In this document: piece after piece, positions 1 through 19,892 of the stretch
Layout: the number at the start of each line of letters is the position of its first letter
How positions within the stretch are numbered: position 1 is the stretch's first letter
Assembly: GCF_963853765.1 (NCBI RefSeq)
Contig: NC_088857.1
Span: forward strand, 49,414,001-49,478,000
Origin: Magallana gigas
Lineage: Eukaryota
DNA: 64,000 nucleotides
Direction of reading: 5' to 3'
Position numbers and translations under genes: made by a program
The notes under the pieces: model-generated
The model's input: the letters and a program-made list of their open reading frames with translations, nothing else
What the model was told of the DNA's origin: nothing
The model's database searches: none

Positions 1-3000
1 AGGCCGAGTCCCGGATGAGGCAGGGGAAGGGGTCCGAACCACCACAGCCCCCCTGGGAGAATCATCCACAAGGTAAAACCACACTCCCAACACTCTACGC
101 ACTTTGTTCATGTAGTGTATGTCATTGCACCATTCAATTTACATCAATAACATTTTAAAACTTTGCTGAAATACTTGTTGTGCCTCATTATCATTAGCAG
201 GAGGGACTTACCCATTTTTAGATTTATTGATAATTACTAACAAGTAGAATTTATAAAGAATGTGTTTGAGAGAATTTAATAACAGCAGTCATGGGGAAAT
301 AATGGGTAACTACCTCCACATCTTGACTATACATGTTAAGAACATACAATATAGCCCAAAATACTGGGAGTAATTCATGATTACTGATCGTGATTGAAAT
401 AAATAATGGACCGCATTACATGTAAAGATATGGTGAAGGGGGCTGGCGTGTTGCAATGTATGTTCACTAATTAATAAAAAACATGTATTTAAAGCTTTCA
501 AACTAACTATTTACTGAAAAGGGTAAGGGTAGTTCATTGCTGCAGAGATCTGATCAACATTTGTCTGGCATCTCTGTATATTGCTCTGTCTGACTTCTTT
601 ATGGAATATGGAGGTTGTTATTTGTGAAATAGATGTGGAAGCAACCAAGTATAAAGAAGTCTGGAATTGGTTAATGCCATGACTATCGGGTCAGAAAAAG
701 GACACAATAATGAAAATGGGGTTGTTCAGTTAGTTTACCCACACATAATTTTAAGTACATAATAACACAATACAAATAATTTGAATATTTGCATAAAAAC
801 AATATTCATTTGAAATTTTTTTCATTTTGTATTCCATTGAATTATTAAGCTACTGGTTCATGTACTAGTACATGTAATAATATTTTGGGCATTGAAATGT
901 TGACGTCTTGTATAACCTGGCTATTCAGTATTGTTTGCTGGTAATGTCACATGTTCTTTGTTTATTGTTGTACTGTGGAGGGATAAAACTGTTACCTACA
1001 CAACTAAGTGATACATGAATTCAGGGATTTTCAATTAACTTAGAAGAGATTTCTAATTTTTAAATATGAAAAAAGAAATTGATTTGGAAAATGGGCAAAT
1101 GTTTTAAGAATCTCATCACCTTTTGGAAAAGCTTCACAGAATAATAAACTTATATGTTCAATGTTAAAACAATGTTTGAAATATATAAATACTGGTGGAT
1201 AAAGTCACAAGACATTTAAATTACCATGTTTCAAATGACAAAATTTGTAAAAGTCAGTGTGTACTTTGGTTTCATCAATATTCATTGAATACCAATTTCA
1301 TGGATTTGGTTGTTGAGTTGATCCGTAAAATTTAATTTCATTGAAGTGCAATTTCTAATACTAGTAACAAATAGTAATGATAAGATAATTTTCCATGGAT
1401 ATATGTATCATTGAAACTGATTTTCATTCAATCCACAAAAATTGATGCCCAGGAATAATGATAACCACAGTATTTAGAACTTATTCACTGCAATAACATT
1501 TTGTACATCAAACCATCTAATATAGGCATTCTTAATCTAGCGATCATAAAAAAGTATCCCACTGTACCAGATAATGATAGAAGTACTGTAAGGCATCAAT
1601 GTTAATCACTAATCCAACTGATGTATGTGTGCTGTTTGCTTTTCCACCCTGATGTCTTCATTGCACTGCTCTCTACTACAGCTTTTACTTCTGAGGAGAT
1701 GACCCGATTCCCTGTGTCGAGAGGGGCGTGGCCGCCGGCTCCACCCCGAGTGCCAGGTCCCAGACAAATCCCCCACCCCACGGGTAGGTTCTCCATCAGT
1801 AGTCTGAGGGGTTTACTGCTGGAAGATTTGTGCATGAACCATAGATTGACAACGTTTAGTCTTTTCATCAATACAGATTTTTTGTTTTCTCTGTATGATC
1901 ATTTTCTAGGATTTAGAAACCATGAAAATTATTTTTTGTCATTTAGTGCATGAAGACTCATGTAGAAAATCAATTTTGTTATCTGATTGTTATATATGAC
2001 AGTCTATTTGTAACAAAAAGGAAGAAAAAAACATCTGATTTCTTCCACCCATTTCACATTATCATAAGCTTTTTATGGATGTGTCACAAATCAAAGCACT
2101 TCTATGTTCAAGCACTGCTATTATGCATTCTCTGTTTTGCCATTAAATTGTTTGTTTCCTGTAAAATTGTTTAATTGTGAAAATCTAACCAAGGAATTGT
2201 TCTCTCTCTTCTGCACAGACTAACTTCTTGTACACAACCCTGTAGAATTGTGTGATCATTAGAGTTCATACTTTTATTTTTGTACTTTAGGATCAGATAT
2301 CTAACGTATTCTGTTGAATGAGAACTCCGTTTATGTTTAACAAAAATTAATGCATTTTTACTATGAATTGGTAATTTTAATAAACTTATTAATAAGTGTC
2401 TAAACTGAAATATGATAAAACATTCATTAAAAAAAAATTCAAAACTGTTATCTATTATTTGTTACATGATCTGTTATCTTTCGTTTGTAACATGACGAAT
2501 GATCTATTTTCTTATATAATCAGTTATTGTTTGAAAGTACATCTATATCTCCTGTCTTATTCAGACATGGAGAACTTTGGTATGCGTCCTCCATACAGTG
2601 AGGGGGTACACCCTGGACAGATGAGGCAGCCCCGCCCCCACGGCCCTATGATGCCAGAAATGTACTCCCCCAAACACTCTCCACAGATGTCCCCAGGACA
2701 GCTCCCAAGTCTCAGGCCAGGCCAGGTAAACCTATCATTCAGTCCTAATCTGTAGCCATGAAGTGAAAAACCTAATTGATTCAAAGATTCGCTCTCCTTA
2801 TTTGATATAAATTTTGAGAAGTGCCCTTATAATTTTTGTGAAACATGACATTAAATAATTCCTGTGTCAAATAAGTATTGTGAGGAAGAGATGGCAAATT
2901 GGCCCATATACAAGACAGTGGGATATCATTACAATCTGTATTTAATTTTGACAGAATCCATTAGCTGGCCATGATCCTAGATCTCAGTTCCCCAACATGA

Positions 3001-6000
3001 TGGAGCACCGCTTCCCTGTCCCTGGCCAACAGGTGCCCCCCAATCAGCAGCAGGTGCCCAACATTTCGGGCCAACCCCAGACTTACAAGTCCTACCCCCC
3101 AGAGACTGGGGAACAGAGTAGGATCAACCCAGGGGCCATGGGGGAGCAGAGGAAGATGAGTGACCATGATCAGAGAGAGGAGGAGAAATCAGTGGAGACC
3201 AAGGAAGAGAAGAAAGAACTGGTGGAAGACAAACAGATGAATGAAGCTGACATTGAGGAGCTTCTAAGTACATAAATATTCCCCAATCAATAGTATCCTA
3301 GTATCTATGAGATGATTTTTTCCTTTGAAAACAAAGATATGATTTTTAAAGAAATGTATGGCATTTAGTTCTTTAAGTGTTCTCAAGATTTTCATTTTCT
3401 TTCCCCATAGGTTCTGATGGAACATTTGACATCATCAAGTTTGTGGACACAGATACTGAACTGAATCTGGATGAGAACAAGAGTATATTTGATGACCTTG
3501 ATGATGTTGAAAGTGGTTCTATGGATAAGGGAGACTCCAAAGAAGACATGAAGATGACGAAAGAGAAGATGGACTCAGATCTGGATTCATCCAAATCAGG
3601 AGGAGGAATTCCTGACTTCCAGTCCAAGTTTTTGGAGTTCAGTCAGAAGAAGAATGAGGAAAGAAAGATTGGTGCCGAGGGCAGTGGCCAGATGAGTGAA
3701 ATGGATAAGAAGGACCAGCAGAGCATCAGTCAGATCGCTGCACTGCTACAGCAGCAGAGCTCAGAGCACATGCCTCCTACCCTGGAGAGGAGGGATTCAG
3801 TCAAGTCTGATAGCTCTCTGCCCGGGAAGGAGCAGCTGCCCAGAACGCCTGGTTCTGGACCTTTGACTCCATCAGGAAAACAGCCAGGGGTGGATCAGGG
3901 ATTCCCAGGAATGGGATCCAGAGGGCCATACTCAGCAGGAATGCACTCCCCTCTCCATCAAATGCAGAGTATCCCCACCCAACCCTCACCAGGTTCCACC
4001 TACCCCCCAGGGCAAGGACCCCCTACCCCTGGCTTACCATCACCCAAGATCATGCCTTCCCCCAGGAGCAACATACCATCCCCAAGGACTCCAAGTGTTC
4101 AGTCGCCCTTCAATCCCATGAACAGTCAGCAGTCTCCATTCCCGCAGACCCAGTCTCCCTTCTCCCCAACTGTCTCTTCTGCCCCACAGTCACCATACGC
4201 TGCCAACAAACCACAGCCATCCTTCTCACTTCCTGTCGGCAGCACTAATCAGCCGGGATACTCCACAGTGGAAAGTGGAGTACCCGTTCAAAGCCCAGGT
4301 CAAAGGTCACCCAGAGGAACCATCACTCCTACAAATCAATACATGCAGGGAACCTACGGTCAGCCCATGATGCAAGGACCCCCTAGAGCTACAACACTGA
4401 CTCCTACACCAACAAGTATACTATACGGAGGACAGTCTGGTATGGCACAGCATGGAATGAGGAATCCTGTACCTGCCTCTATGAATGGAAGTCGACCACC
4501 TTTCTCAGGAGCATCTGCCCATCCGATGGGCCACAGCATGGAGACGGCCACCTCACAGATGCACTCGATGGATCCGTCTGCTGTTCCACACATGGCTACC
4601 TCTCAGTCCTCCCACACGCCGGGAGACATGCAGGGTCATCCCCCCTCCAGCCAGAGCACCGCTACTATGCCACCATATGGAATGCCCGGTCAAAGGATGC
4701 CAGGAATAAGGCCTCCAATGGGAATCCCCACCTCCTCAGTTCCATCCTCTGCCCCCGGGGCTCCGGGAGGGGGTCGGCCCCAGCTTCTACAGGACCAACC
4801 TCTGTTGATACAAGATCTGTTAGAACAGGTAAGGAAATCCATGGTTTACTTACTATTATATCACTGCCACTAACTGCACATTAAACATTCTGTATCATTC
4901 TGCACCATATACATAATCATAATTGTCATCTTGTCAAGTACTACTTTGAGAAAGCATTATCATATTTTAGTATGAAGATGGTAGCAGGAAGATTAAGCTG
5001 ACACAAGTATGTTTTGTATAGGACATTGAAAAAAAAGTTAATTCACTCAAAAATTAATGTTCATAAATGTAGTAGTTAAATGACTATTGGAAGAACAACA
5101 CTTGGTCTAATTTGTATTTACTAACAAGTCCAAACTACTTGTGTTTGCTTACTTATAGGAGAAACAGGAGCAACAGAGACAAGCCCAGCAACAAGCCATG
5201 GGCATGATGCAGCGCCCACCCCCCGAGGCAATGATGGGACAGCCACCGAGACCAGGGATGCCCATGGGCCAGTATAGACCTCGCATGGAGGGGATGAGGT
5301 GTGTATTTTATCAGACATTGAATTTAATTCTTATTACTATGCTTCTAAATATGCATGAGATTGTATTGGTGTATAACAATTGTCCTAGGCACCCTGTGGA
5401 TCCTAACTGGAATGTCCAGCGACCGTATGGACAGCCGGAGATTCCCCCAGGACAGCCTCAGTTTGTGAGGATGCCGGGACAGCAGATGCCTCCAAGGATG
5501 CCTGGACCTTATGTTGGTCAGCCACCGGGGGTTGTTGGCCCCATGGGGATACCCACTCCCCCACCCCCTCCTCCCCAGCCCCCTATGACAGGTCAGTATT
5601 CATTTCAGTCCTTCAGCTGGACTAGGTATCCTACATCAGTTATTTATATTTTGAGCATCATTTTACACATGTGTAAATGAGGTATGCTGTGTTATGCACT
5701 AAACTGTTTTGATGACTCTGAAAATCCTTTTTGACAATCCCATTTGATATCAGGGGAGTTAACTCCTGAGCTGGAGAGACAACAGCAGCAGTATGAGGAC
5801 TGGCTGATGAAGCATGGCAACTATCTGGAGATGCAGGTCAAGACCCTGGAACAACAGATCGGCAAGTGCAAGCGCACCAAGAAAGCCATCAATGCAAGGA
5901 ATAGGCAGGTGAGAGTCGGCTTTCTTTTCCTATGAATAAAAGTGGAAGGTATAAACATTAAGATATAGGTAATATTTATGTATGAAATTCTCTGCACATA

Positions 6001-9000
6001 GTATTGTACATGTGTTGTACGTGGCACAAAACATGTTCTATTGTTATCATAAAAATTATTATTTTTAAATGAAACGATATACATGTACATATGACTGGAT
6101 CAATTTACTAATTTTTGTAAGAGTGAAACTTGCTCATATATTTGTTGTTGTTAGCTTCACTGAAATTGCTTCTTGAATTATGTCAGGCAAAGAAAACGGG
6201 TAGAGAGCCATCAGCAAACGATGCGACAGAGCTGGAGAGAGTGACACAGGAGCAGGCTGGTCTCCAGAAACAGCTGGAAAGCTACCGCAAACAGGTCAAG
6301 CAGCACCAGATGCAGACCCAGGACTACCGCACCAAGAAACGGGTAAGACAGACTGGGAAATTTACTGTCACTCTGTTAGCATCTCAGGTACCGGTATATA
6401 TTAGATGTATGTGTAAGCAGTGACTGATTAGAGGAGGGTGTTAAGAAAGCATAACAATTGGATTGAGCATAGATGTTTTTACAATTACTCAGAGAGCACC
6501 TGAAGCTAAATGTGTATTAGATATATTTGTTAGCTGCAAATGATTTAGAAAAAGGTGTTATGACAGCTTAATGATAAGATTGAGCTATTCCACTTCCTAT
6601 ACCGGTAAATTAATGTAAAGTCGAGTCTGTGACAAGTTAGGCCTACTTTCAGGAGCGCTATGGACAGGATTGGGCCTTCAGCCAGATGCCCCCAGTAACA
6701 GGCCCTGCCATTATGAATGTTCCGCCTGGGGGGTTACAACCCCGAATCCCCGGTCAGCAGGGCTCGGCGAGACTGACTGCCTCGGCCAGACAAGCTTATG
6801 ATGAGTACATGCAGGACAGGTTAAGGCAGAACCAGCAGATCCCCGGGGCAGTGGGTGGGCCGCGTCCCAAACACACAGTGGTAGAAGTAAGTGACTGGTT
6901 ATAGATATGACCCAGGTTATGTGGTTCTTAACATTCATGGAGAAATTCTGTCAAGGAAAAAAGTCTCAAAACAAGAATTGAAGTTTAGATAAATGTAAGC
7001 CATGCAGATTTTACTGATTTGGATATGTCATCCGAAATATCATTTTGACAGAATTTTTCCCTGAAAAAAAAAAATGAAGTGATTTACCAAGAATGATATA
7101 AAAAAAATATGTTTGTTTTGCTAAGCATTAATTTGTATCACTTAATATTGCACCATTCGTGATGGCAGTCAAAGTGAAAATTGTAAAGAGATCATTCTGT
7201 AGTTCTTAACCTTTTAACATGTTTTTGATGCTGTGAAAGCAAGCTGCTTTGAGGAATGACTGCAAAATGTTTTCATGCATTTACCAAGTGAGAAAATCAT
7301 AAAATCACTGAATGTGGCAGCTTTGTATTAACCACTGAGGATGGATGTGGTATATGTAGCATTTTTTTAATGGTCTAACCAATACTACTTATGATCCAAA
7401 TAGTAGATAATTCATGTCCCTACAATTCAGGATAACAAGACTAAAGTGGCAGGGCCCAAAGCCATACTACAGGTGAGATAGTCACATTTTCTCTGTATCA
7501 GGCCTTAGCATGACACACAAAACAAAACGCTTCAGCTAACAATCTGCTGAATCCAGACAGATCCAAATAACCCGCCCACTACACTGTTACTAGGGTAGCC
7601 CTGACTTGTCTCCGTTTCTTTGTTGTTTTTATGTCATGTTGTTCTCGTAACATTTGGGGTCGCTATGGAGTCAATCCTGTTGTCCCCGTAATTTTTTTTC
7701 TCTCGTTCGTGTTTTATGTACTACATATTTACGGCCATTCAGGCAGCTTCTGCCATGACCTAAGATATTAAGAGATTGTTTTCTTTTGCATAGTTCTTTC
7801 AAATGAAAATGCAGTACTTAATTAATTAATGCTTTTTGTGTTGTAAGTAAATGATAACCTAACTGAACTTGAGTAATATTTTATTTAAACACAATGCTTA
7901 ATGTCTGATGGCCAGAACAGAATGCCTACATTTAATCAGTTATCAGTTAAAGACTAAAGTTCAACCAAGGTTTAGTTGTGTACCATTTTTGGAAATGTGC
8001 ACTTCTTGGCTACTGCAATTTAACATCTCTAATAAAATGGAAATGAGCGAGGGGGTATGTTTTATTGCAGTATTCTAATCCTGGGTAACAATAGTTTGAT
8101 TAACATCACACCTGCCTCAAATGTTAAAAATTAACAGGCATGACAATTCATAGTTATAGGACGGTATGACTAGACAAAGTGTATCTATGTGTTGTGAAGA
8201 CTTGCTTTGGTAAGGAGAATTCAATGAAAGTTGTTGAATTTCATTGCTAGTGGCTATCATTTGGTACAGAAGCATGTACATAAAACACAAGATTAAGTTA
8301 CATTGTATGTTGATTGTTTGTTTTATTCAAGTAAGTATTAATGGGGGCTAAAAAAATTTATCTTGCCCTGTATCCCTTTACTCGGTGAATATCTGGGCTA
8401 ATTTTGATTTATATATCAAGAGAGAGAGACAGAGAGGAGAGATTTGCTTTTTTGTTTACCGCTCAATCCAATGCACAGAGTAAGTTTGCTTTCTCTAACA
8501 CTCGTAAACTGCAATATCTCAAACTAAATTATTGTGTGTTTACTAAAATCTTCAGTCTTTGGCATATTTTCTTTTAATCATAAGAATTATAAATACATTT
8601 TGTATAATTAGTCTTAGCTTGGAAAAAAGTCCAAACTTCTAGAAAGATTAACATCCAGCTAGTTGGACATATAAAGCAAGTTATTAATATATATGTGTTT
8701 AAAAAGCTCATCATAAGAAAGGAAGCTGTGAAAAAAAAAGATGTCATTTTATTGCACTGTCCAAAGTTTAGTTAGTTCGAGTACTCGGTGATGTTCATTT
8801 AGTCTGAGTAAGAAAAACTTCCATTAGATCACAAATTTTGTTCTGATATATCATGTTATAGTTGTAAGTGTTGCATCAATGTACCCTTATTTTTTGTATA
8901 TACATGTATATATGGCATTTATATATATTTTGGCAGTTATATTTATTTCTCTTTCATTGCCATTTGTTAACTAACAGCCTATGTACTGGGCTGTGTTTGT

Positions 9001-12000
9001 ACACCTGGTTGGTGATAAATTCATTATTAGTTCAATGTGAAACTCATTTTGTAAAAGAGAAAAAACCCATTCATTTTGTTTAAGACAGGCAGGGTTCATC
9101 ACACATGGGCCAATCAAAATTGAGGATGCTGGAAAATTATGGGGTTTTTGGGGGGAGGGGGGATGTGATGATAGAAAATTACAATACATGTCATTTTTAA
9201 GTCTGCTCATACCTTAAAAATCAAGTTGGGAAGTTATAGTGATCTTTAATTTGGACATCATTTTCCATGTCTCTATCACAGTCATGATTAATCATTGGAT
9301 CTTTGCAAAGAGATATTGGAAATGATTCCTATCAACTAGGGGACTGGAAAAAGTAAATTGAATGTTCTAACCTTGTTTCAGGATAACAACCCATTCAGTG
9401 AAGAATACCAGGAAAGAGAGCAAAGAGAAAGAGTTGGCTGCCTGCCAAAGCCTGGGCCTGAACCTGGTATGCATCTCCTTATTCATTAAGCAATTGGTTG
9501 TAATAATTCTTCTTTCTGCTAAACCTTTGCAGACATGCAGTGTTTGGAACTGGGATCTGATAAATGCAGATTTAATATTATTCTACATAAAATCGCAAGA
9601 CTATTAACATGAAATCATATTTATAAGATTCATTATTGTATGAAATCTTGAAAATATACTTAAGTTAAGGCTTAGCTCTAGAATGAAAATGTTATGAAAA
9701 CAAGACATAAAAGTACAAGAAATTATTAAAATCTAATTTCTGCAGTGCCCAAAGCAGAAACACTCAGTAAACTTGATTATCTTAATTTTGATACAAAAGT
9801 CCTATGTTTCATGACACAAAGTTTATACGTCTGGTCTTTCATTAGTAGAAAAACCAGAGATGATGAGACAGATGCCACCGTACTTTGACCCCAGAACCAT
9901 GCCCTATGATCAGACAGGAAGGTTCCCGGCCCCTAGGATGCCAGGCCCAGCGGAACCCATGCAGCGGTTTCCAGGTACAAAACCTTAACATTATACATGT
10001 ATCTATCAGTATACGTCCATGATACAACTTGCTGCACTTTTTGCCCCCCCCCCCCTTCCCCCCCCCCCAAAAAAACCAAAAAAACATAAGAAGTTCATAC
10101 TTGGTAAAGGGTTGCCTGTAATCCCAAAGCACCAGTACTATTAGTGGAGATGTGTATACCTCAATTCATATTAAAATTATTGTTCCAATTAGTCGAGTTA
10201 AGTCAGAAAAGATTCTTCATTTTCAATTTCATAAACGAAGATGGTAAGAGTGGATTAAATGGTAAAAAAAAAAAAAAAAAACCAAATTAACTTGAACAGA
10301 GATCTATATCAAGTAACATTTCCCTTTTAATAAGTTGATAGTTAACAAAGCAGGCATACCTGTTTCATGTACATGAACTTGTTCTCACCAGGTCCTGGGC
10401 AACACATGCCTTTTGATCCATCAGCGGCTAGGATGCCTGGCCCCCAGGACTCTACCCCCAGACACCAGTTCCCCCCAAGGATGTACACTCCCATGAACCA
10501 AGGACAAGTGGAGGGGGCACCTGTTGGACCACACCCACAAATGCCCTACCAACCAGGCAAGTATCGGTCCCTGTATAACAAAAGGCAACTATAAGCTATC
10601 TTTGGAATAGTGTTTATTATACGCTTTTTACTGACTGTTTCACATTTCATTGTATTGTTTAGGCATCAAAAAGTAAGTATTGGGGAATTGATATTTCACA
10701 TTTTGTGTATTGTTGCTGTATTTTGATATCTCTTTTACAATTGTTTTATTTACGTTAGTTCCATATTGTTATTATTACCAATGTAACTTTAAAGAGCAAA
10801 GTTCATTTTTTTTTCAGAAATTTTATGAATATTTGAAGTTCATATTGTGTTCACCTGAAAATTTGAATAACTTTTTTTTTCTAAAAGGTCAAATCTTTAA
10901 TTCTTCACTCATATCTTCAAAAATTTATGATTATAGACAAAGGAAAAGTGTATTCCAGATAAGGTGCAAAACACATATGAACCCAGAAAATGCTATTGAT
11001 GCTGCATTTTTTTGTATAATGATTTCATTTCCATCGCAATAATAGTTTAAATGATAGTTGTGAAGGTTTTTCGTAAGAGTATTAGGTTGTTCTCTGATCA
11101 AATAAGTTGGTAATTCAAAGACTGAAATGACTGTATTCATGGACAGGTACAGTTGATGTTATAAGGGCTAAGTTCATGCATTGATCTGTTTGTTATTTCT
11201 GTTACATTTGGTATATATATATATGACAGAACAGAGGAACAGAATAGTTCAAGAATTGATGTCAATAAAGTTTTTGTTATTTTTTGAGCGAGTTCTCCTC
11301 GGTTTTCAGTAAATGTATCTATATGTAAATGTAACGAGGCATATTTATATGGAATATTAGTGTGAGGATGGGTTGTCATCTAAAGCGATACTGGTTATCC
11401 CATATTTTTAATTTAAGTTAACATTAACAATTTTGTAATTAATTAGTTAGGTTAATAAACTCAGGTTAAGATTTTATTATGGACTCTGGGTTTTCCGTTT
11501 TGGTCATCGCTGTGCCATTTGTATTAGTGAAACAGGTTTTTCATTTCAATGGTTGCTTGCATTTGTTTTGATGCAAACTTTTTTTTTCTGTCTGCTAATT
11601 AATGAAATTGAAGATTAATACTAAAGAGAACCAATCTGGATGTTCCAGGTTTTTCGACACCTGCGTCTGACATGGGTACGAACGTGGAATCGGGCGAGAA
11701 AAAGTCAAAGAAACGTAAAAAGAAGAAGAAAGCTGCAGAAAGTAAAGCATTCTCAGTACATTGATTGGCACACTTTTTTGACTGTATTCTTTTATGCTTT
11801 TGTATATAGAGGTTTTTTTCTGTTTTCTTATCCCATTCCCTGCACCTTGCTATATTTTACATTCTTACCTATGTAAAAAGTGCACTTATCAGTCTTGCTC
11901 TTAGTTAATTTTGTGAAAGAAATGCTGTTTGATGTTTGAGGGATAAATAATCTAATAGTATTCTAATGATACTTGAATCATAATAGCAATGAACTTGTAA

Positions 12001-15000
12001 AACATTTCAGAATGGTCTAATTAGCATTTTGATCTTTACAAGGTTTAAGTATTTTTTTATTCTAATCTAAATTTTTACCAACATGGCCTTTAGCATGGTT
12101 TTCAAGATTTATTTATCTTTTTTTTTCAATTTATTCAAATGCTATTTTAGACTTGTAATTATTTAAAGGATGCAGTATTTAGTATTTTGACTGTCTTGCT
12201 ATAGCCTATACAGCAATAATGTTTGTTACAGTTAATTACAGTAAAACTGCATATATAAATACATTATTCAGAAAGGGTATTGCCTATCTGTGTGTATCCC
12301 TGCATATACTCTAGCTTCCTCACATATATAGATACTTCATTTTATCAATGGACTTAATTAACTCTTCATATGCTCTGAATATCTTAATCTTGTTGTACCT
12401 TTCTCTGTGTTTACTAATATAACATCTGTTCTATATTACACAAGCAGATTAAGAATTTTACAAGTAGAGGCACATTCTGTCCTGAGACTGTAGTCTTGAC
12501 CTGTTTCCTTCATATATCATTGCTTAACCTTCTGTCCCACATAAAGAAGCAAAAGAAGGATCAAAAAAGTGTGCCGCTGGGTGTATCTGTGTTGTGCTGT
12601 GTATCGTAGCTCTAACGTTTCTTGGCTTTTTCACAGGAAGATGAGATTCTATCCCTTTGATTATTATTTTTTTACGTTGTTTTTTAACAAGTGCTATGTA
12701 ATGTGTATGTAGTATTAATGAAAATCTGGATTTTGTTGAATTGTATCAACAAGATTGACTTGCATGCTATTAATATAAAAATGATTGGGTTTACATTTTG
12801 AATTCAGGTGTATTATTTGGCATTCCTGTGTTAGCCTGCATTGTGCACTGTTCCCCTTTCTCATTCTGAGAGCTTTAGTTTCTGATTCATCTTTTAGATG
12901 TGTGGTTTGGATTTTTTTCTCTTATTTTATTTCATTGTTGGACATTTTGTTTAATGTTTTTTTTTCTGTTTTTAGTAAATTGCTGATACTAGTGTTGCCA
13001 TGAAAGACAAGAAATTTTATTTAGATGCAAATAGGAGGCCTGAAAAATACAGGGCCTGGATTTATGTACTAACGTGTTCATTATAGATAGAAACAGACTT
13101 CCATTGTTTAATTCTGTTGGTCAAATCTCGAATATTGATGGAGATTTCATTATAGTCATATGTAGTGGCTAAAAACTCAAGTCAACTAGCTTCAATTGCT
13201 TTAACCTGCTGGGCATATAGCAATCACTATTCACTTATCAATTGTCAGTCAGCCATATTAGCCAACAAAAGTGCAGACATCTCTCATATTTTAATATTTA
13301 CTTCCTCCGTGTTCAGGATAATTCCCATTTGATGTCCAGGTCAACTGTTGAGGCTGTCCCTTTCAATTGTGTTTCTTTGTCAGTTGAAAAGTGAATATCA
13401 GAAGAAGTCTTTTCAAGATGTTATATGGAAGTTTTATATACAAAGAGATATTTTTATTTCTCCACTTTAAGTTAGAACTGGTAGTTTGTTAGGTGTTGAG
13501 TTACTGAAAATAATCTTTTGATGCTTGGTCAATAGGATAATGAAATTAGAGGGTGAATAAGAGATCCAAGGTTATAAATGAAGTGTTTAATTTGAGTTTC
13601 AATCTGACTTTATCAGGATTTTCTCTGTGTCCAACTAATTTTGTTTTTGTTATGTTCTATTAATTGATGTGTGGCATGGAAACAAAAAACTCAAAAAGTA
13701 ACATTTTGCAGCATCCTTGAGAAAACTGCATGTTGAGATATTTGGTGTTTAACTATAAGAGGCCCGTATTTTCAGAAGGAAGGTTGTGCCATCCTAAAGC
13801 TGATGCTACATGTATGTGCTGATTGGAACCTATGACTAATGCAAAGATAATGCAATTAAATCTGCATATGATCAATTTAATTAATGTTTCAACTGTTTTC
13901 CTCCAAGTGAATGCACTTTAATTTTACACACTCTTTCTTAACAGCAAAAATTTAAACCTTAAGTTTACATCTCACAGATATCAATTTTATGAATTTTTGA
14001 TGCATAAGTTTTTTGTATTTATATAAAATACAACTATGGGCTGAGTATGAATTCATGAATTGTACAAGAAATGGGGTAGTCAAATATTACGAAGGGATTG
14101 GCAGCCCAGATCAGAGGTTAAGTCTGCTCTCTATGTGCCATTTTGAATAGGTGAAAAATTAGACATATACAATGTAGTATAGTTGTTGTGGAATGATGGT
14201 CAAGCATTTCTGTTGTGTGAATCCTTTAAGAGCATGTCTGGTTCTGCCTATGTCAGTCCAAACATCTGTAGAAGTACATGTAAAGTAGATCAATGGGAAT
14301 GTCTGTATAGATTTACGTGTTTTGTCTGTAAACATTTAATTGAAGTATGTTGCAATAAGTAGATATCAAAATCGAAGTTTTAAAAAAATTGATTTTTTTT
14401 TTTTACCTTAAAATTTTGTTGATGTAAGATGGTATCATTCGTTTTCATGTGAAGATACTCAGATATAGAAATGATCTTGAAACGCTTTGTTTATTTGTGC
14501 TGACTCTGTTTCTGATTTTATTCAGGTCCAGCTGCTACAACGGTAGGCACTGCCGAGCCAAGGCCACCCGTCCAGTTTACTCCTCAGTCTGAGACCGAGA
14601 AACGCATCATGGAAATTCTAAACAATTCAGCGGGACTGGCAGCCCGATCTCAACACGAAGCTGTGGACAAGTCCCCAGGGAAGGCAAAGGCTGGGGACAC
14701 CCAGGGATCCCCTGCCACAGAGCAGAAACCTGAGGGCAGGAAACCAGAGGAGGGTGAGGGCGCTCAGAGGGTGACCTCTGTAAGTGTGCCCGGCCCCAGC
14801 ACTCAGCCCACCTACACCACTGCTGTCTCTCATCCAGCATATCAGAGTGAGAGCAATGACCCTGACGATCAGCAGGAGGAGCACATTCTGCCAATGAATG
14901 TGATGATTCATCAGAGCATTCCTCAGAGTGCAGCTATTGCCTGCTCTGTACCCCCGGTCCAAGTGTCCCAGAGTCAGCAGATGGAGGCAGCTCGGATCCA

Positions 15001-15979
15001 AGAATCGGAGTCAATGCCTCAGACAGCTGCGAAGTCAGTAGAAGGAAGTGTTCAGTCTGATCAAGGGCATACTCAAGAGAGACCACCGATCAGTGGCAGC
15101 TCAGAGGCACAGCCTGTGTCTTCAGTGAACAGCAATGTGAACACTGTGCAGGAACCAGAAACTGTCAGCACAAATGTGCAGCATTTACCTCCCCACTCCT
15201 ATCCAATGACCTCCCTCCCTGGTCACCCCCTTCCTCCTCCCAACACCCAGGAAAGAATGTCTCCCAGGGGCATGGTTCCTCCAGCTTATATGGGTGCTTA
15301 TGGCCATTTTCAGGGCAGGATGTCACCACGACAGGCACACTATGGTGGTGCCCCTCCATCATTAATGCCTGTTTCACAGAACCAGTCACCAAGGCAGTCT
15401 ACCGCCCCCTCCCCTGGAAGATACTCACCCAGACAGGCTAGTCCCTCCTACCCTGGGGGTCCATCCCCTGGGCGTTACTCACCCCGACAAGGTTCTCCTG
15501 GAGTATCTAGGCCTCCCTCGAGACCACCTTCCCAGCCTGGGTCAGGATATGCACCCCCCAGGCAAGGCCCTACCCCACCAATAACTGGCTATCCGAGCTC
15601 CACCCCTCCTGCCTCGCCAAATGTCACTTACTCTCCAGTTACAACTTTCAGTGCTGTGTCAGTAGATAATTCATCAAGAGTGGAAACTTCTGTAGCTCAT
15701 ACAACAATAAACTCAAGGCCTAATGTTTCTACAAGTACTGTTCAGTCCGTCTCCCAAAACACACCCACAGACTCTGTAGCCCCTCCCCCAGCTACGGAAT
15801 CTGCGAGTGCACCAGTAGTGGAACAATCAAATTTAAAACTGCAAGATACCAATACTAGTGTAAATGTTAGTCAAACAATTCAAGCTTCTAGTGCAAGTTC
15901 TGTGTCCACCTCAGAGACAGTGACCACTGCCTCAGAACAGTCACAGGAAGTCCCCAGCAGTAAAGATGCCGACCAGTAG
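1..15979 (+). CDS. KMT2C: KMT2C/KMT2D (MLL3/4)-like histone methyltransferase complex protein, 5'-partial; about 1639 aa lie in the window and no SET domain is present
   Basis: Phase-consistent exons: <1-72, 1682-1783, 2565-2725, 2955-3267, 3411-4828, 5159-5298, 5389-5591, 5754-5908, 6187-6342, 6653-6886, 7431-7472, 9382-9466, 9846-9974, 10392-10556 (GC donor), 11649-11741, 14526-15979 (TAG). The translation contains RPQLLQDQPLLIQDLLEQEKQEQQRQ, QYEDWLMKHGNYLEMQVKTLEQQIGKCKRTKKAINARNRQAKKTGRE and DNNPFSEEYQERE. These match human KMT2C blocks I recall (RPLLLEEQPLLLQDLLDQERQEQ; QYEEWLQETQQLLQMQQKYLEEQIGAHRKSKKALSAKQRTAKKAGRE; DNNPFSESFQERE). Invertebrates have one gene, so the C versus D label is nominal. 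Confidence 0.88.
1262..1472. mobile_element. MITE of about 210 bp with imperfect TIRs (TA-CTGT...ACAG-TA class)
   Basis: Left end TACTTTGGTTTCATCAATATTC versus right end GAATAATGATAACCACAGTA; TA at both ends; no ORF. Confidence 0.55.
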
Positions 15980-16983
15980 ACTAGTCGCTGACCAGTAGAC
16001 TACCTGTAGTCACTGACCAGTAGACAAGTCACTGGCTGTTGTTAAGTGTGTATATGATTTATGAAAGATACTTTATGCATAGTTTATTTGATTTATTTTA
16101 ATATTATATCTGCAAATAATAAATGGTATGTGATCTGTTTCTTGTTTTTGTTCACTATGAGATGATCATGGTACTCTGTAAGTTTCCTACCATATAAAGG
16201 ATGTAAGATCATTAAATGGTGCAATATTGAAATGGGGTACCGAGTAGCCAAAATGGAAACTCTGTTTTAGATATTTATACCCCAAGCTACAAGTTGAAAG
16301 GTACATGTATAATGTTGGTTCACCAGTCTGTCAGCCAGGTCATCAGTCCTGTTTATTTGTAAGTGTAACACCTATAAAACCTCTGCACGGAATTTTGTAA
16401 AACTGTGTACGTATATATGACAAATACATATGTAGACGTGCATATAACATGGAAAATTCAGTTCCATTCTTTTTTTTAAGGATTTTCAGCGCTTTTGAAT
16501 ATTGACCATTCACGCACACACGTACTTCATTGAATTTTTGTACCTTAAAAGATGGCTTGGCATTTACCATTTAAATGTACATGTTTTTATTAGTAATAAT
16601 AGGCGATGCCATGTAATTGTATACTAGTATCAGTGAATTTAGACCCTTTTATTTTTTTTCTACTCTTTCGTATACAGTATAAAACTGTAAATTACCTATT
16701 TCTTGTAGATGTTGTTCACTGAACCAAAATTTTGACAAATTATAATTCAACGGCAACCGTAAGAAAATATATCGAAACCATCCATATTGATATACATGTA
16801 GATAATAATTATTTGAATTCGAGAGGATGTCAAACGCTTGCAGAAAAGGAAAATACACGTTACCGTAAAATATACATGTACACCGTGTATCAATCTCATT
16901 GTGCGTCTCTACATCTGTGTTATCATGGAAGAAAGAAAACGTCAAACTATCTTTTAAAATACAGAGATATCAAATACTAGTAT

Positions 16984-17206
16984 TAGAACCATTTTAACAA
17001 GACCTTGGACTTTCGGTAGAATGTAATAACTATTTTTTTCTTGCATCAAAACAAGTTAAAAGGGAGGCTGGTTTCAAGTGAAATATACACAGATTGCGTC
17101 AGCTCAAAAGCTAAGGGCCATAGGCAGCAAAGAAATACACAGACCTACGTCACATTGCTATTTGACACAACTACCCGAAGTCCAAGCTCCTGTTAAAATG
17201 GTTCTA
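16984..17206. mobile_element. MITE family A, copy 1 (TA-flanked)
   Basis: TIRs TAGAACCATTTTAACAAGACCTTGGACTT and AAGTCCAAGCTCCTGTTAAAATGGTTCTA. The internal CCTACGTCACATTGCT is shared with copies at 17970, 21592 and 23602. Confidence 0.75.
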
Positions 17207-17969
17207 ATTGAAGTCGATAATGGGAGGCACCGTCTTCGATGCACAAAATGCTGGACTTTCGGTAAGACGTAAATGTGTTCTCGCCCATTTTTTTGCAAAA
17301 CAACTTTAAAGATTTCACAACCTTGTTTTTTCATTATGACGTTAGCCCGACGTCATCATTTACGTCTGAGAAAAGAAAATGAAAATGCATTGATTGACAA
17401 GACAAGCTGATTTTAACATATATTAGAACATGTAAATACTAATTAGACATCATTATGAGTGTTATCGAATGCACAAATGCAATTAATGAAAGGTTGTGGA
17501 GGGAAGAAAAATGGCTATTTTTCTTTTCATGAAACTCTTGGTTAATCAATACAAAAATAATTTCCATACAACTATTGACTTAATAAGTTTGGAATCGTAT
17601 AAATTAATTAGCTTAAGGCAAAAGAATTTAAATAGTAAATCGGTAGTTAAAAATACAGAAGTTATAATTGTAAAAGAAGCGAAGTTAATGCATACGGTTC
17701 AATTAATTTTCTTTTCTAAGCATGGAGTTCCAACGCACAGTGATACCTTATCTTATAGAACAAAATGTGACAATATATGTCACGTATTTAAATTTTTAGC
17801 ACTTGATAATTATAAATGTTTGTAAGAACTGCATTTAACTTTATGAAATATTTCCTTTTATGTTTCTGAAGATCATTTGTCAAAAAAAATGTATGAGTTT
17901 GTTATGACAGTCAACTCTTCACGTCGAATCCTATTGCGACTTCAGCAAACCCGCGAGCTACGTTAAATG

Positions 17970-18133: not shown

Positions 18134-18191
18134 TAATACGTAGGCGTCGATAGTATTGTTATGTTTGTTAGTTAGCTCCAACAATTTCAGA

Positions 18192-18920
18192 ATGGCTTCA
18201 GGTCAACCCTTGCCGTCTTTGATAATTCCTGGTTTTAAAATACCATTAAATGGGATTGGTGAATATAACATTAACGGAGTCACCGAAGAATTCTCCAATG
18301 GGATCCAAGCCAATTCAAAGGCCTTCCAAAATCGCTTCCCTCCGATATCCCATCTTCAAGTTCAAAACAACCAGAGAAGGAAGGCCCCGGGTAATTTCTC
18401 CAACCTGTGGTCATATGGAACTCCGTTTCTTGTCAAACTTCTCTTCACTGGAAATCTTCCGCAGACGTTTTTTGATGAACTGTGTTCTGCGATTCAAGAC
18501 CCAGTCAACAGAAAGAAACTGTGGCATAGAAAAGAGACGCCTGTGGAAAAGTCTAAAGACTTGTGGGAACCGAAGGACTGGGCCAGACTTCGCGATCACG
18601 GAAGGCATGTTGTTTTGAAGATAATCGATGCTCGTCTTCGGCAGAAGGAGAAAATGCTTCAGACACAGAATGCAATGCAAGAAAACAGCAGAGAAAGAAC
18701 AGAGGCAGTTCTGATGAAGAAAGCTGGCATGATGAGCAGCGGTAAAAAATCATACCTCAGCAAGATTGAACAGCAAGCTGAAAAAATAAGACATACTCGC
18801 AGAATCAAACGTGCCCCTACTAGAGAAACGGAAACTCCCCATAAACCAGCGTCCATCTTCAACCTTACAGATTCTACTCTCTGCAAGACCCCTAATTTCT
18901 GCAATAATTATCGTCACTGA
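18192..18920 (+). CDS. Uncharacterised 242-aa protein encoded in a single uninterrupted exon
   Basis: A 729-nt ORF (MASGQPLPSL...NNYRH) in AT-rich surroundings, with ordinary amino-acid composition and a K/E/R/Q-rich, probably helical C-terminal half. A TTTCAG acceptor-like site sits just before the ATG. No family recognised. Confidence 0.55.
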   Translation: MASGQPLPSLIIPGFKIPLNGIGEYNINGVTEEFSNGIQANSKAFQNRFPPISHLQVQNNQRRKAPGNFSNLWSYGTPFLVKLLFTGNLPQTFFDELCSAIQDPVNRKKLWHRKETPVEKSKDLWEPKDWARLRDHGRHVVLKIIDARLRQKEKMLQTQNAMQENSRERTEAVLMKKAGMMSSGKKSYLSKIEQQAEKIRHTRRIKRAPTRETETPHKPASIFNLTDSTLCKTPNFCNNYRH

Positions 18921-18984
18921 GTAAATGTGCATATTGATGTATGTACTAGTAATTAACAAGCTGAAGATGTGCGAGGTTAATATA

Positions 18985-19892
18985 TATATATTTTGTCCAC
19001 ATTGCAAATCTAGTGTTGAAGATGAATTCCATTTTTTATTTGTTTGTCCTCTATACAGAACATTGCGCAGATTATACATGAAAGAATATTATTATAAAAA
19101 ACCTTGTATGTTTAAATTAATTCAACTTTTTAATACTGACAATGTTAAAGATCTCTGTTATCTTGGCAAATTCATCTCAAAAAGTATGTTATTAAGGGAC
19201 AACTGTATTACATAATTGTAGTCTTTTGTTTTGTCAACCTGTATATGTAACAGTAAATGTTATTATCTGTACATGCACAGGTTCTCCTGTAAATACACTA
19301 CCACCTCAGGTTATACATATGTCATACTGATAAGCTGTAAAGCTTAAAGGGACTTGGACACGATTTGACTTAAAATTTTCAAATTTTATTTTTCCATTTT
19401 CAATGTTGATACTGATAAATGTAGAAGTTTATAATGCTATGTCAAAATTTGAAAGTCAAATGTCAAGTTATAAGCAAGATACAGAGATCATAATTCTTTG
19501 TTTTGTAAACAAACAAGAATATTGTCATTTTTTACATATGTGTTGTATTGGTGTAAGTTTCAATCAAATGTATCTTTCTTTTCTTGATAATAGTATTTAT
19601 GAAGATACTGAATTAGTTTAAATTGTTTTTACATGTCATTTTGTCAAAGAAATGGCAATTCTCTACATTACATTTTTCGTAAACAACTATAAGACTCGAG
19701 CTTTGTTTACATAAAGACCAATTCATACCTCTGTATCTCGCTTGTAATTTGACTTTAACATTTAATATTTTGGTCAATCATTTAAAATGCACCAGTAAAC
19801 CATTTTCTACATAAAAAATAAAAATAAAATTTTTGATCTTAAATCGTGTCCAAGTCCCTTTAAAGAAATAAAGAATTGTTGAAAAAAAATAT
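18985..19892 (+). mobile_element. 5'-truncated non-LTR retrotransposon (CR1/L2-like) 3' end, interrupted by a MITE
   Basis: CPHCKSSVEDEFHFLFVCPLYRTLRRLYMKEYYYKKPCMFKLIQLF resembles the C-terminal CxxC..EDExHF..C motif of invertebrate LINE ORF2. The tail AAATAAAGAATTGTTGAAAAAAAAA resumes at 19864 after the MITE. Confidence 0.7.
19348..19859. mobile_element. 512-bp non-autonomous DNA transposon with TTAA target-site duplication and purine termini (Kolobok-like)
   Basis: TTAA(19344-47)|AGGGACTTGGACACGATTT ... AAATCGTGTCCAAGTCCCT|TTAA(19860-63). TTAA TSD with 5'-RR ends is the Kolobok signature; piggyBac ends begin YY. Confidence 0.8.

What the first reader, a model, noticed from the sequence alone, without database searches (positions are those of the whole stretch)
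9382..16130. KMT2C/D orthologue appears to end without ePHD/FYR/SET domains: a possible independent Lpt/Trr-type gene split in a mollusc
Seen: after the conserved DNNPF-ERE block (9382) the in-phase spliced frame runs only about 640 more codons of low-complexity P/S/T/Q sequence and stops at TAG 15977-79, with AATAAA near 16118. No zinc-finger, FYRN/FYRC, WIN or SET exon is recognisable in the remaining 48 kb, and a complete same-strand gene (NAPRT) lies downstream. Established: vertebrate KMT2C continues roughly 1,500 residues past this block to a C-terminal SET domain (from memory), and Drosophila encodes the protein as two genes, Lpt/Cmi (PHD/HMG half) and Trr (SET half). Inference: this lineage may have split the gene separately, at a breakpoint placed after the coiled-coil block, leaving a non-catalytic COMPASS scaffold.
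Basis: partly seen in the sequence, partly recalled or inferred. Interest (0 to 1): 0.75.

Follow-up and report, generated by a model that had tools for sequence, protein, structure and literature searches.

The report
Oyster KMT2C/D gene split in two
In the Pacific oyster the large enhancer-marking histone methyltransferase KMT2C/D is encoded as two genes on different chromosomes, a chromatin-reading half (in this window) and a catalytic SET half, as in fruit flies and planarians but cut at a different place, and the same split occurs in pearl oysters and mussels but not in scallops, clams or snails.

Summary
The window lies on a 57.3-Mb chromosome-scale contig (C5) of Magallana (Crassostrea) gigas. 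It holds the 3' third of a KMT2C/D-type gene whose upstream exons encode two PHD clusters and an HMG box. From the DNNPF block at 9382 the frame runs 641 codons through five exons to TAG 15977-79.

- RNA contigs confirm the 11741->14526 junction and a terminal exon with 3'UTR. No junction leaves that exon.
- RefSeq isoforms (3,611-3,704 aa) end at the same stop.
- The only KMT2C/D-type ePHD-FYRN-FYRC-WIN-SET-postSET gene in the genome lies on another contig, at C2:52,991,882-53,003,266. It sits behind a septin gene and has its own ATG.
- Neither half has a second copy.

In M. californianus the two halves also sit on different chromosomes. Scallops, Solemya, Mya, four gastropods, an annelid and a nemertean have one 5,300-7,200-aa protein.

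The fission is independent of the dipteran and planarian ones, cut about 1,300 residues further C-terminal than in Diptera, and probably arose once in the mussel + oyster ancestor. I found no paper describing it. The gene models themselves are already in RefSeq. The scan's earlier notes held only this same finding.

The parts
1..71 (+). coding exon of the Lpt-type (reader-half) KMT2C/D gene. The gene begins upstream of the window at C5:49394200.
   Evidence: exact match to RefSeq M. gigas isoform P0361 residues 2054-2076. Boundaries are whole codons, +-2 nt.
1681..1782 (+). coding exon
   Evidence: exact protein mapping
2564..2725 (+). coding exon
   Evidence: exact protein mapping
2955..3269 (+). 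coding exon
   Evidence: exact protein mapping
3413..4828 (+). large P/Q/S-rich coding exon (472 codons)
   Evidence: exact protein mapping. ORF listed.
4971..5006 (+). coding micro-exon
   Evidence: exact protein mapping
5159..5299 (+). coding exon
   Evidence: exact protein mapping
5390..5593 (+). coding exon
   Evidence: exact protein mapping
5756..5908 (+). coding exon
   Evidence: exact protein mapping
6187..6342 (+). exon encoding the conserved coiled-coil block (ANDATELERVTQEQAGLQKQLESYRKQVKQHQ...). In Anopheles this block sits in the Trr-type half.
   Evidence: It matches Argopecten residues 3278-3331 and Anopheles P0013 residues 110-158 (E 6e-11).
6653..6886 (+). coding exon, skipped in isoform P0360
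   Evidence: exact protein mapping
7431..7472 (+). alternative 14-codon exon, present in isoform P0357 only
   Evidence: exact protein mapping
9382..9466 (+). exon with the DNNPFSEEYQEREQRE block, the start of the finding
   Evidence: It matches Argopecten residues 3431-3447.
9846..9974 (+). coding exon
   Evidence: Boundaries were set by AG/GT sites and split codons.
10392..10556 (+). coding exon. The likely donor is GC (AG|GCAAGT).
   Evidence: RNA contigs join its last 24 letters to 11645-11649 (table 7). CCAGG stands on both sides, so the joint is ambiguous by 5 nt.
11649..11741 (+). coding cassette exon (K-rich). One RNA contig skips it.
   Evidence: junction 11741->14526 (GT..AG) in RNA contigs of runs X9 and X2. 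A loose end at 14523 shows the skipped form.
14526..15979 (+). terminal coding exon: 483 codons, P/S/T/Q-rich, no Pfam domain, ending in TAG 15977-79
   Evidence: All four RefSeq M. gigas isoforms that were checked end with exactly this translation.
15980..16514 (+). 3'UTR, with AATAAA at 16118-16123. The main 3' end is probably near 16.13-16.2 kb and a longer form reaches 16430-16514.
   Evidence: RNA contigs span 14526-16430 (X2, then adapter) and 14946-16514 (X9). PolyA+ raw-read depth drops after about 16.0-16.2 kb and is zero or near zero at 16.4-16.8 kb.

Best explanation
This is a real gene fission of the single KMT2C/D (MLL3/4, 'MLR') orthologue of Magallana gigas.

The protein is Lpt/Cmi-type and carries two PHD-finger clusters, an HMG box, a long Q/P-rich disordered region, the coiled-coil block, the DNNPF block, two further small conserved blocks and a fast-evolving S/T-rich tail. 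It then stops and is polyadenylated.

The catalytic half is a separate gene at C2:52,991,882-53,003,266, about 11.4 kb, encoding roughly 2,300 aa. The protein has about 1,050 aa of disordered N-terminus, then conserved blocks including an acidic patch, then ePHD, FYRN-FYRC, a WIN motif (GCARTEP), SET and post-SET.

Shown here:
- The two loci lie on different chromosome-scale contigs.
- Each half is single-copy.
- The domain contents are as listed above.

Inferred:
- As with Drosophila Lpt/Cmi and Trr, the two proteins probably assemble non-covalently into one COMPASS-like complex. The SET half would supply WDR5 docking, catalysis and probably UTX binding.
- The cut fell inside the roughly 1,900-residue unconserved linker of the ancestral gene, at about residues 4,360-4,640 of the 7,001-aa Argopecten protein. 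It was probably made by a chromosomal rearrangement.
- It probably happened once, in the common ancestor of Mytilida and Ostreida, after scallops diverged.
For: Locus evidence:
- FYRN and FYRC Pfam hits in the genome occur only at C2:53.00 Mb, C8:50.78 Mb and C2:9.52 Mb, none on C5 near the window.
- The C2:52.99-53.00 Mb locus carries ePHD, FYRN/FYRC, WIN, SET and post-SET with a stop.
- Its first ORF starts with ATG at C2:52991882, with an in-frame stop 12 nt upstream. Septin exons end about 17 kb upstream on the same strand.
- There is a single KMT2C/D-type SET exon and a single PHD-cluster-2 exon in the genome.
- PHD clusters and the HMG box lie upstream of the window on C5.

Transcript evidence:
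- RNA contigs show the 11741->14526 junction.
- They also show a continuous terminal exon plus UTR at depth 160-200, against 10-19 in the intron.
- No junction leaves that exon.
- RefSeq M. gigas isoforms end with exactly this exon.

Other species:
- Reader-half-only models exist in C. angulata, O. edulis, S. cucullata, Pinctada imbricata and Mytilus californianus.
- SET-half-only models exist in three Mytilus species.
- The M. californianus halves lie on contigs of 140.8 and 117.9 Mb.
- In Pinctada the homologous terminal exon ends the gene, and no SET-half exon lies in the locus or in 10 kb downstream.
- Unsplit proteins carrying PHD, FYR and SET occur in Solemya, Pecten, Argopecten, Mya, Haliotis, Patella, Littorina, Physella, Owenia and Lineus.

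Breakpoint and phylogeny:
- By length arithmetic, the oyster and mussel breakpoints fall in the same stretch of the Argopecten protein.
- Mytilida is sister to Ostreida, with Pectinida outside (PMC4936043).
Against: - Its start rests on the ORF, the upstream stop and the analogous Mytilus models.
- Physical association of the two proteins is inferred from Drosophila only.
- Mussel and oyster tails and heads show no significant similarity. A single origin therefore rests on phylogeny and approximate breakpoint position.
- Synteny could not be compared, because the 10-kb flanks were too short.
- Some 'half' models in other molluscs (Biomphalaria, Bulinus, Batillaria, Mizuhopecten, Ylistrum) are probably fragmented annotation. 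For Ylistrum and Mizuhopecten, other scallops have unsplit proteins. For Biomphalaria and Bulinus, the related freshwater snail Physella has one. Batillaria has no such check. Database architecture alone is therefore not proof.
- Arcida, Limida and Pinnidae were not sampled.
Confidence: 0.9

Rival explanations
1. The fission is real but arose twice, once in mussels and once in the oyster and pearl-oyster lineage. The long disordered linker would be the only place where the protein tolerates a cut.
For: - The Trr-type N-termini of oyster and Mytilus show no similarity.
- The Lpt-type tails are alike only at composition level (z about 1.9; 11 of 300 shuffles reach the score).
- The split has recurred in other animals: Diptera and planarians (PMC10570056, PMC6128892), and possibly Dreissena.
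- The position of Mytilida was unstable in Lemer et al.'s smallest matrix.
Against: - By length arithmetic, both breakpoints map to about the same 300-residue stretch of a roughly 1,900-residue linker.
- The taxa that carry the split form a clade in the best-supported phylogenomic tree. One event is therefore the more parsimonious reading.
Confidence: 0.33
2. It is an assembly mis-join or an incomplete gene model. On this reading the SET exons really follow the window's last exon, or lie in an assembly gap.
For: The window has two short N runs at 63.36-63.87 kb. Many mollusc KMT2C/D models in databases are fragmented.
Against: - The terminal exon has an in-frame stop, a 3'UTR and AATAAA, and RNA contigs end there.
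- A complete NAPRT gene follows.
- The SET half has its own ATG behind a septin gene on another chromosome-scale contig.
- The same architecture recurs in independent assemblies of five other genera. In M. californianus the two halves are again on different chromosomes.
Confidence: 0.03
3. One protein is still made, by trans-splicing or a rare alternative splice from an upstream donor to the C2 exons.
For: None was found. The raw-read depth was low (1-20x), so rare events cannot be excluded.
Against: - The only junctions and loose ends on 11.4-16.6 kb are the normal 10556->11649 and 11741->14526 joints, a cassette-skipping form and an adapter.
- The first exon of the C2 gene opens with ATG just after a stop, and no obvious acceptor is needed.
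- Annotated Mytilus SET-half proteins start with Met at the equivalent place.
Confidence: 0.02
4. The window gene is a truncated duplicate or pseudogene, and a full-length KMT2C/D exists elsewhere.
For: None.
Against: - Own-genome searches find only one PHD-cluster-2 exon and only one KMT2C/D-type SET exon. The other SET hits are 42-55% identical paralogues.
- The gene is expressed and spliced.
- It is conserved at 84% identity over 1,840 aa with Ostrea and Saccostrea.
Confidence: 0.01

Closest known systems
Drosophila Lpt (Cmi, 'lost PHDs of Trr') plus Trr, the dipteran split of MLL3/4
   Same: The partition is the same in kind. The PHD clusters and HMG box are in one gene and ePHD, FYRN/FYRC and SET in another. 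Both halves are single-copy (PMC7608747, PMC10570056, PMC9813062).
   Different: - The breakpoint differs. The Anopheles Trr-type protein carries the coiled-coil block at residues 110-158.
- The oyster reader half is therefore about 3,650 aa. From memory, not checked here, Drosophila Lpt is about 1,500 aa.
- The event is independent. Other arthropods are unsplit (Strigamia, Chamberlinius, Ostrinia, chelicerates), and so are most molluscs.
[quoted passage not shown] 2018, PMC6128892)
   Same: This is another spiralian with partial orthologues of MLL3/4: a PHD half, and halves carrying ePHD, FYRN, FYRC and SET.
   Different: - Planarians have two SET-half genes, the oyster one.
- An annelid, a nemertean, gastropods and most bivalve groups sampled are unsplit. 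The planarian and bivalve splits are therefore separate events.
- The planarian breakpoint was not compared here, because no planarian sequence was in hand.
Unsplit molluscan KMT2C-like proteins (Argopecten irradians 7,001 aa, Pecten maximus 7,016 aa, Solemya velum 7,165 aa)
   Same: They are collinear with the oyster reader half over Argopecten residues 6 to about 4,085-4,220, and with the oyster SET half from about 5,454 to the end. They have the same conserved blocks in the same order.
   Different: They are one gene and one protein. The oyster lacks continuity across Argopecten residues of about 4,360-4,640.

Membership tests
KMT2C/D (MLL3/4, MLR) orthologue, reader half (Lpt/Cmi type) | Two clusters of PHD fingers (a quartet and a triplet) | tested here: met
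   PHD-type exons lie at C5:49396898-49398900 and 49400895-49402121. Pfam PHD hits were found on three of them. They are collinear with amphioxus and Argopecten PHD clusters.
KMT2C/D (MLL3/4, MLR) orthologue, reader half (Lpt/Cmi type) | HMG box behind the second PHD cluster | tested here: met
   Pfam HMG_box, E 3e-7, on RefSeq isoform P0361 at about residues 1618-1669. The exons are at C5:49407111-49407523.
KMT2C/D (MLL3/4, MLR) orthologue, reader half (Lpt/Cmi type) | No ePHD, FYRN, FYRC or SET in the same gene product | tested here: met
   - Stop at 15977-79 with a 3'UTR, and no outgoing junction.
- No SET-half marker in the window.
- Precomputed Pfam lists for the oyster proteins lack FYRN, FYRC and SET.
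- PF13771/PF13832 hits are listed for the Ostrea and Saccostrea reader-half models. These come from a first ePHD-like module next to PHD cluster 1, not from the C-terminal one: the C. angulata model's residues 456-537 also match the C-terminal ePHD of Argopecten.
KMT2C/D (MLL3/4, MLR) orthologue, reader half (Lpt/Cmi type) | Orthology to KMT2C/D rather than KMT2A/B or another PHD protein | tested here: met
   The best database relatives are all named KMT2C/2D-like. There is 48-50% identity over about 1,500-2,000 aa with the N-terminal part of unsplit scallop KMT2C-like.
KMT2C/D (MLL3/4, MLR) orthologue, reader half (Lpt/Cmi type) | Associates with the SET half in one COMPASS-like complex | not testable with these tools
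   Inferred from Drosophila Lpt-Trr only (PMC7608747). No complex prediction was run, because the contacting regions are unknown.
Trr-type catalytic half (the partner gene on C2) | ePHD, adjacent FYRN and FYRC, WIN motif, SET and post-SET, in that order | tested here: met
   - Pfam zf-HC5HC2H, FYRN, FYRC and SET hits.
- GCARTEP WIN-like motif, and post-SET CCCGAPGCRKWMN followed by a stop.
- Collinear with a complete SET-half protein, P0003, from residue 293 to its end.
   - ATG at C2:52991882, with an in-frame TAA 12 nt upstream.
- A GATGGCGAC / ATGGCCGCC motif lies about 140-160 nt upstream; it recalls the YY1 site as I know it from memory, not tested here.
- The nearest same-strand gene upstream is a septin.
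- No RNA 5'-end data were obtained.
Same evolutionary event as the dipteran Lpt/Trr split | Breakpoint between the HMG box and the coiled-coil block | tested here: not met
In Anopheles it is at residues 110-158 of the Trr-type protein. Intervening lineages are unsplit.

The most novel reading that the evidence does not exclude
The fission is a single, very old rearrangement that can serve as a rare genomic change uniting mussels (Mytilida) with oysters and pearl oysters (Ostreida), to the exclusion of scallops. It is at least the third independent cut of KMT2C/D in animals, and it lies at a different point of the central disordered linker. That would make bivalves a natural experiment. Scallop (one protein) can be compared with oyster or mussel (two proteins).
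Probability: 0.55. Interest if true: 0.6.

Novelty: new member of a known kind. Interest (0 to 1): 0.52.

Why it matters
KMT2C and KMT2D are the main enhancer H3K4 mono-methyltransferases and are major cancer and developmental-disorder genes. Much of what is known about their non-catalytic roles comes from the natural Lpt/Trr split of Drosophila.

A further independent split, cut about 1,300 residues further C-terminal, shows that the central linker is a general 'safe' cutting zone. Close relatives that are still unsplit (scallops) give a comparative system for asking what covalent linkage is for.

For bivalve systematics, the character supports the contested mussel + oyster grouping.

For practical oyster epigenetics, the gene named 'KMT2C-like' on this chromosome encodes no methyltransferase domain. 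The catalytic partner has to be looked for on another chromosome.

Tried and rejected
- **Second or nearby SET half.** I looked for one near the window or as a paralogue and found none.
- **Same breakpoint in oyster and mussel, by sequence.**
  - BLAST of the oyster SET-half N-terminus against the Mytilus N-terminus gave only E 0.2-0.8.
  - Both are uninformative because the regions are low-complexity.
- **Synteny at the junctions.**
  - Oyster septin and STIM exons were not found in the 10-kb flanks of the Mytilus SET-half gene.
  - NAPRT was not found within 10 kb behind the Pinctada reader-half gene.
  - These genomes have longer intergenic regions, so this says nothing either way.
- **Other loci.**
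  - The scallop loci could not be fetched: P0198 is over the 5,000-aa limit and P0169 is not on record. The same was true of the Mytilus reader-half locus (P0208 not on record).
  - The Ylistrum 'partial' model was shown to continue downstream. Exons for Argopecten residues 3471-3677 lie in the flank, but the flank ends before the breakpoint region.
- **Oyster SET-half protein in the databases.**
  - The representative search returned only fragments for the oyster's own SET half. The top hit was 251 aa at 100% identity.
  - No annotated full-length oyster SET-half protein could be cited.
- **Literature.** Searches found the fly and planarian splits but nothing on bivalves. The library lacks most subscription journals, and Chauhan et al. 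2012 could not be read.
- **Rfam.** It found nothing at 16.5-17.6 kb.
- **Complex prediction.** None was run, because neighbouring or partner status alone is not reason enough and the contact regions are unknown.
Full report
**What is in the window.** The window is G000:C5:49,414,001-49,478,000 of a 564-Mb assembly in 29 contigs.

RefSeq proteins named 'histone-lysine N-methyltransferase 2C-like [Magallana gigas]' lie on a contig of exactly C5's length, 57,274,926 bp. They map residue for residue onto the window. The organism is therefore the Pacific oyster.

From the DNNPF block the coding exons are 9382-9466, 9846-9974, 10392-10556, 11649-11741 and 14526-15979. That makes 641 codons, ending in TAG 15977-79, with AATAAA at 16118-23. 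The last exon has 483 codons, is rich in P, S, T and Q, and has no Pfam domain.

**The gene is the N-terminal half of KMT2C/D.** The 20 kb upstream of the window on C5 carry the first and second PHD-finger clusters and an HMG box. The C. angulata protein P0205 (3,686 aa) maps collinearly from C5:49,394,200 to window 15,976.

The protein aligns at 48-50% identity over its first roughly 1,500-1,840 residues with the N-terminal part of unsplit scallop KMT2C-like proteins. It then aligns through the coiled-coil block (window 6187-6342), the DNNPF block and two further small blocks.

**The transcript ends here.** Public RNA-seq contigs from two studies show the GT..AG junction 11741->14526. They also show a continuous piece from 14526 to 16430 (followed by adapter) or from 14946 to 16514. 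Depth is 160-200 there, against 10-19 in the preceding intron and 0 at 16.6-16.8 kb.

Stranded polyA+ raw reads fall about 7-10 fold after about 16.0-16.2 kb. No junction or consistent loose end leaves the terminal exon. All four M. gigas RefSeq isoforms that were checked end with exactly this exon.

**Where the SET half is.** Pfam FYRN and FYRC searches of the whole genome hit three loci, none on C5 near the window.

- C2:52,991,882-53,003,266 (+) carries, in order:
  - a 687-codon first ORF that opens with ATG, 12 nt behind an in-frame stop;
  - a 363-codon P/Q-rich exon;
  - several conserved blocks;
  - ePHD, FYRN-FYRC, a GCARTEP WIN-like motif, SET, and post-SET with a stop.
- Septin exons end about 17 kb upstream of it on the same strand, and STIM-like exons (named by eye, not tested) follow about 12 kb downstream.
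- The other two loci are a trx/KMT2A-like gene (C2:9.52 Mb, FYRN and FYRC 8 kb apart) and a FYRN-FYRC-only locus (C8:50.78 Mb).

Searching the genome with the SET exon and with a PHD-cluster-2 exon shows that each half exists once. No SET-half marker matches the window.

**Not an artefact.** Reader-half-only proteins of very similar length are annotated in independent assemblies:

| Species | Length (aa) |
|---|---|
| Crassostrea angulata | 3,686 |
| Ostrea edulis | 3,685 |
| Saccostrea cucullata | 3,552 |
| Pinctada imbricata | 3,673 |
| Mytilus californianus | 3,938 |

The oyster C-termini are homologous. In Pinctada the homologous terminal exon ends the gene, and no SET-half exon lies in the locus or in 10 kb downstream.

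SET-half-only proteins starting with Met are annotated in three Mytilus species, at 1,946-2,363 aa. In M. californianus the two halves sit on contigs of 140.8 Mb and 117.9 Mb.

**Who is unsplit.** Single proteins with PHD, FYRN, FYRC and SET occur in the following species:

| Species | Group | Length (aa) |
|---|---|---|
| Solemya velum | bivalve | 7,165 |
| Pecten maximus | scallop | 7,016 |
| Argopecten irradians | scallop | 7,001 |
| Mya arenaria | clam | 6,577 |
| Haliotis | gastropod | 6,245 |
| Patella | gastropod | 5,825 |
| Littorina | gastropod | 6,325 |
| Physella | gastropod | 6,707 |
| Owenia | annelid | 5,342 |
| Lineus | nemertean | 6,313 |

Deuterostomes and many arthropods are also unsplit. 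The unsplit state is therefore ancestral for molluscs.

Several short models are best read as fragmented annotation, because other scallops or, for the two planorbid snails, the related freshwater snail Physella have unsplit proteins. These are Biomphalaria, Bulinus, Mizuhopecten and the 'partial' Ylistrum; the short Batillaria model has no such check. For Ylistrum the downstream exons were seen directly.

The taxa that carry the split form a clade, Mytilida + Ostreida, in the phylogenomic tree of Lemer et al. 2016, with Pectinida outside (PMC4936043).

**Where the cut lies.** The positions below are on the 7,001-aa Argopecten protein and come from length arithmetic.

|---|---|---|---|---|
| Oyster | aligns to about 4,085-4,220, then about 140 more residues | about 4,360 | first anchor at 5,454 is residue about 816 | about 4,640 |
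| Mytilus | last anchor at 3,880, then 570 residues | about 4,450 | residue 1,120 aligns to 5,707 | about 4,590 |

Both cuts therefore fall in the same part of a roughly 1,900-residue unconserved linker. This fits one event but does not prove it. The new tails and heads are too diverged and too low in complexity to align.

**Comparison with known splits.**

- *Diptera.* In Drosophila and other dipterans the PHD clusters sit in Cmi/Lpt and the SET domain in Trr (PMC10570056, PMC7608747). The Anopheles Trr-type protein carries the coiled-coil block at residues 110-158 (E 6e-11). The bivalve cut is therefore further C-terminal and independent.
- *Planarians.* They have Smed-LPT plus two trr genes (PMC6128892). 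Because an annelid, a nemertean, gastropods and most bivalve groups sampled are unsplit, that split is also separate.
- *UTX-binding patch.* An acidic patch block (…EHEFGDLDEEFPML…), about 450 residues before the ePHD, stays with the oyster SET half. I suspect it corresponds to the UTX-stabilisation domain of Rickels et al. This was not tested here.

**How it most likely works.** By analogy with Lpt/Cmi and Trr, the two oyster proteins should join in one COMPASS-like complex. The SET half would bring WDR5 docking, catalysis and probably UTX binding. This step is inferred, not shown.

**Novelty and limits.** The gene models are already in RefSeq under the name 'KMT2C-like'. I found no paper that notes a bivalve split, but the library is incomplete. 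The scan's earlier notes contained only this same finding.

The weak points are three:
- There are no RNA data for the 5' end of the C2 gene.
- There is no synteny test.
- Arcida, Limida and Pinnidae were not sampled.

Noticed in passing
window 16983-17208: A MITE-like dispersed repeat of about 225 bp lies just behind the gene's 3'UTR. It has terminal inverted repeats of about 36 bp. The first look of the own-genome search gave 2,888 candidate copies, and the 40 that were scored are 72-83% identical. RNA contig depth there is 1,600-4,600 on both strands, and many reads run off into unlike sequence.
   Followed up: partly
protein P0213 (Dreissena polymorpha LOC127844448, 5,330 aa): This zebra-mussel model has the PHD and HMG half. 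It extends through the block that is the first conserved block of the oyster SET half (Argopecten 5764-5835). It then ends without ePHD, FYR or SET, although the related Mya arenaria has an unsplit 6,577-aa protein. It is either truncated annotation or a further split at yet another position.
   Followed up: partly
window 10556/10557 and 11645-11649: The intron after exon 10392-10556 seems to use a GC donor (AG|GCAAGT). CCAGG stands at both sides of the joint, so aligners place it ambiguously. One RNA contig skips exon 11649-11741. RefSeq isoforms also differ by exon 6653-6886 and by a 14-codon exon at 7431-7472.
   Followed up: partly
Exons are recognisable at about 30478, 30745, 31425, 33497, 35138, 35379, 35759, 40089, 40905, 41825 and 42089.
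   Followed up: partly
window 18156-19215 (+): A 254-codon ORF of unknown kind is followed by a 96-codon ORF with a CPHC...C motif, which resembles the zinc-binding tail of non-LTR retrotransposon reverse transcriptases. It is probably a retroelement remnant between the two genes.
   Followed up: no
'Tyrosinase-like protein 2' entries oddly appear as members of the same 90% protein cluster as the KMT2C-like isoforms.
   Followed up: no
G000:C8:50775651-50778243 (-) and G000:C2:9519601-9529273 (-): These are the other two FYRN/FYRC loci of the genome. The C8 locus has FYRN and FYRC, and the SET-exon search hit nothing on C8 (TBRG1-like by eye). The C2 locus is trx/KMT2A-like, with FYRN and FYRC 8 kb apart and a SET exon at C2:9519601.
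   Followed up: no
L015:6716-6745 (= G000:C2:52991716-52991745): An ACATGGCCGCCGCGATGGCGAC motif lies about 140-165 nt upstream of the SET-half ATG. It resembles YY1-type core promoter elements (AAGATGGCGGC) and is a candidate for the promoter the SET half acquired after the split.
   Followed up: no
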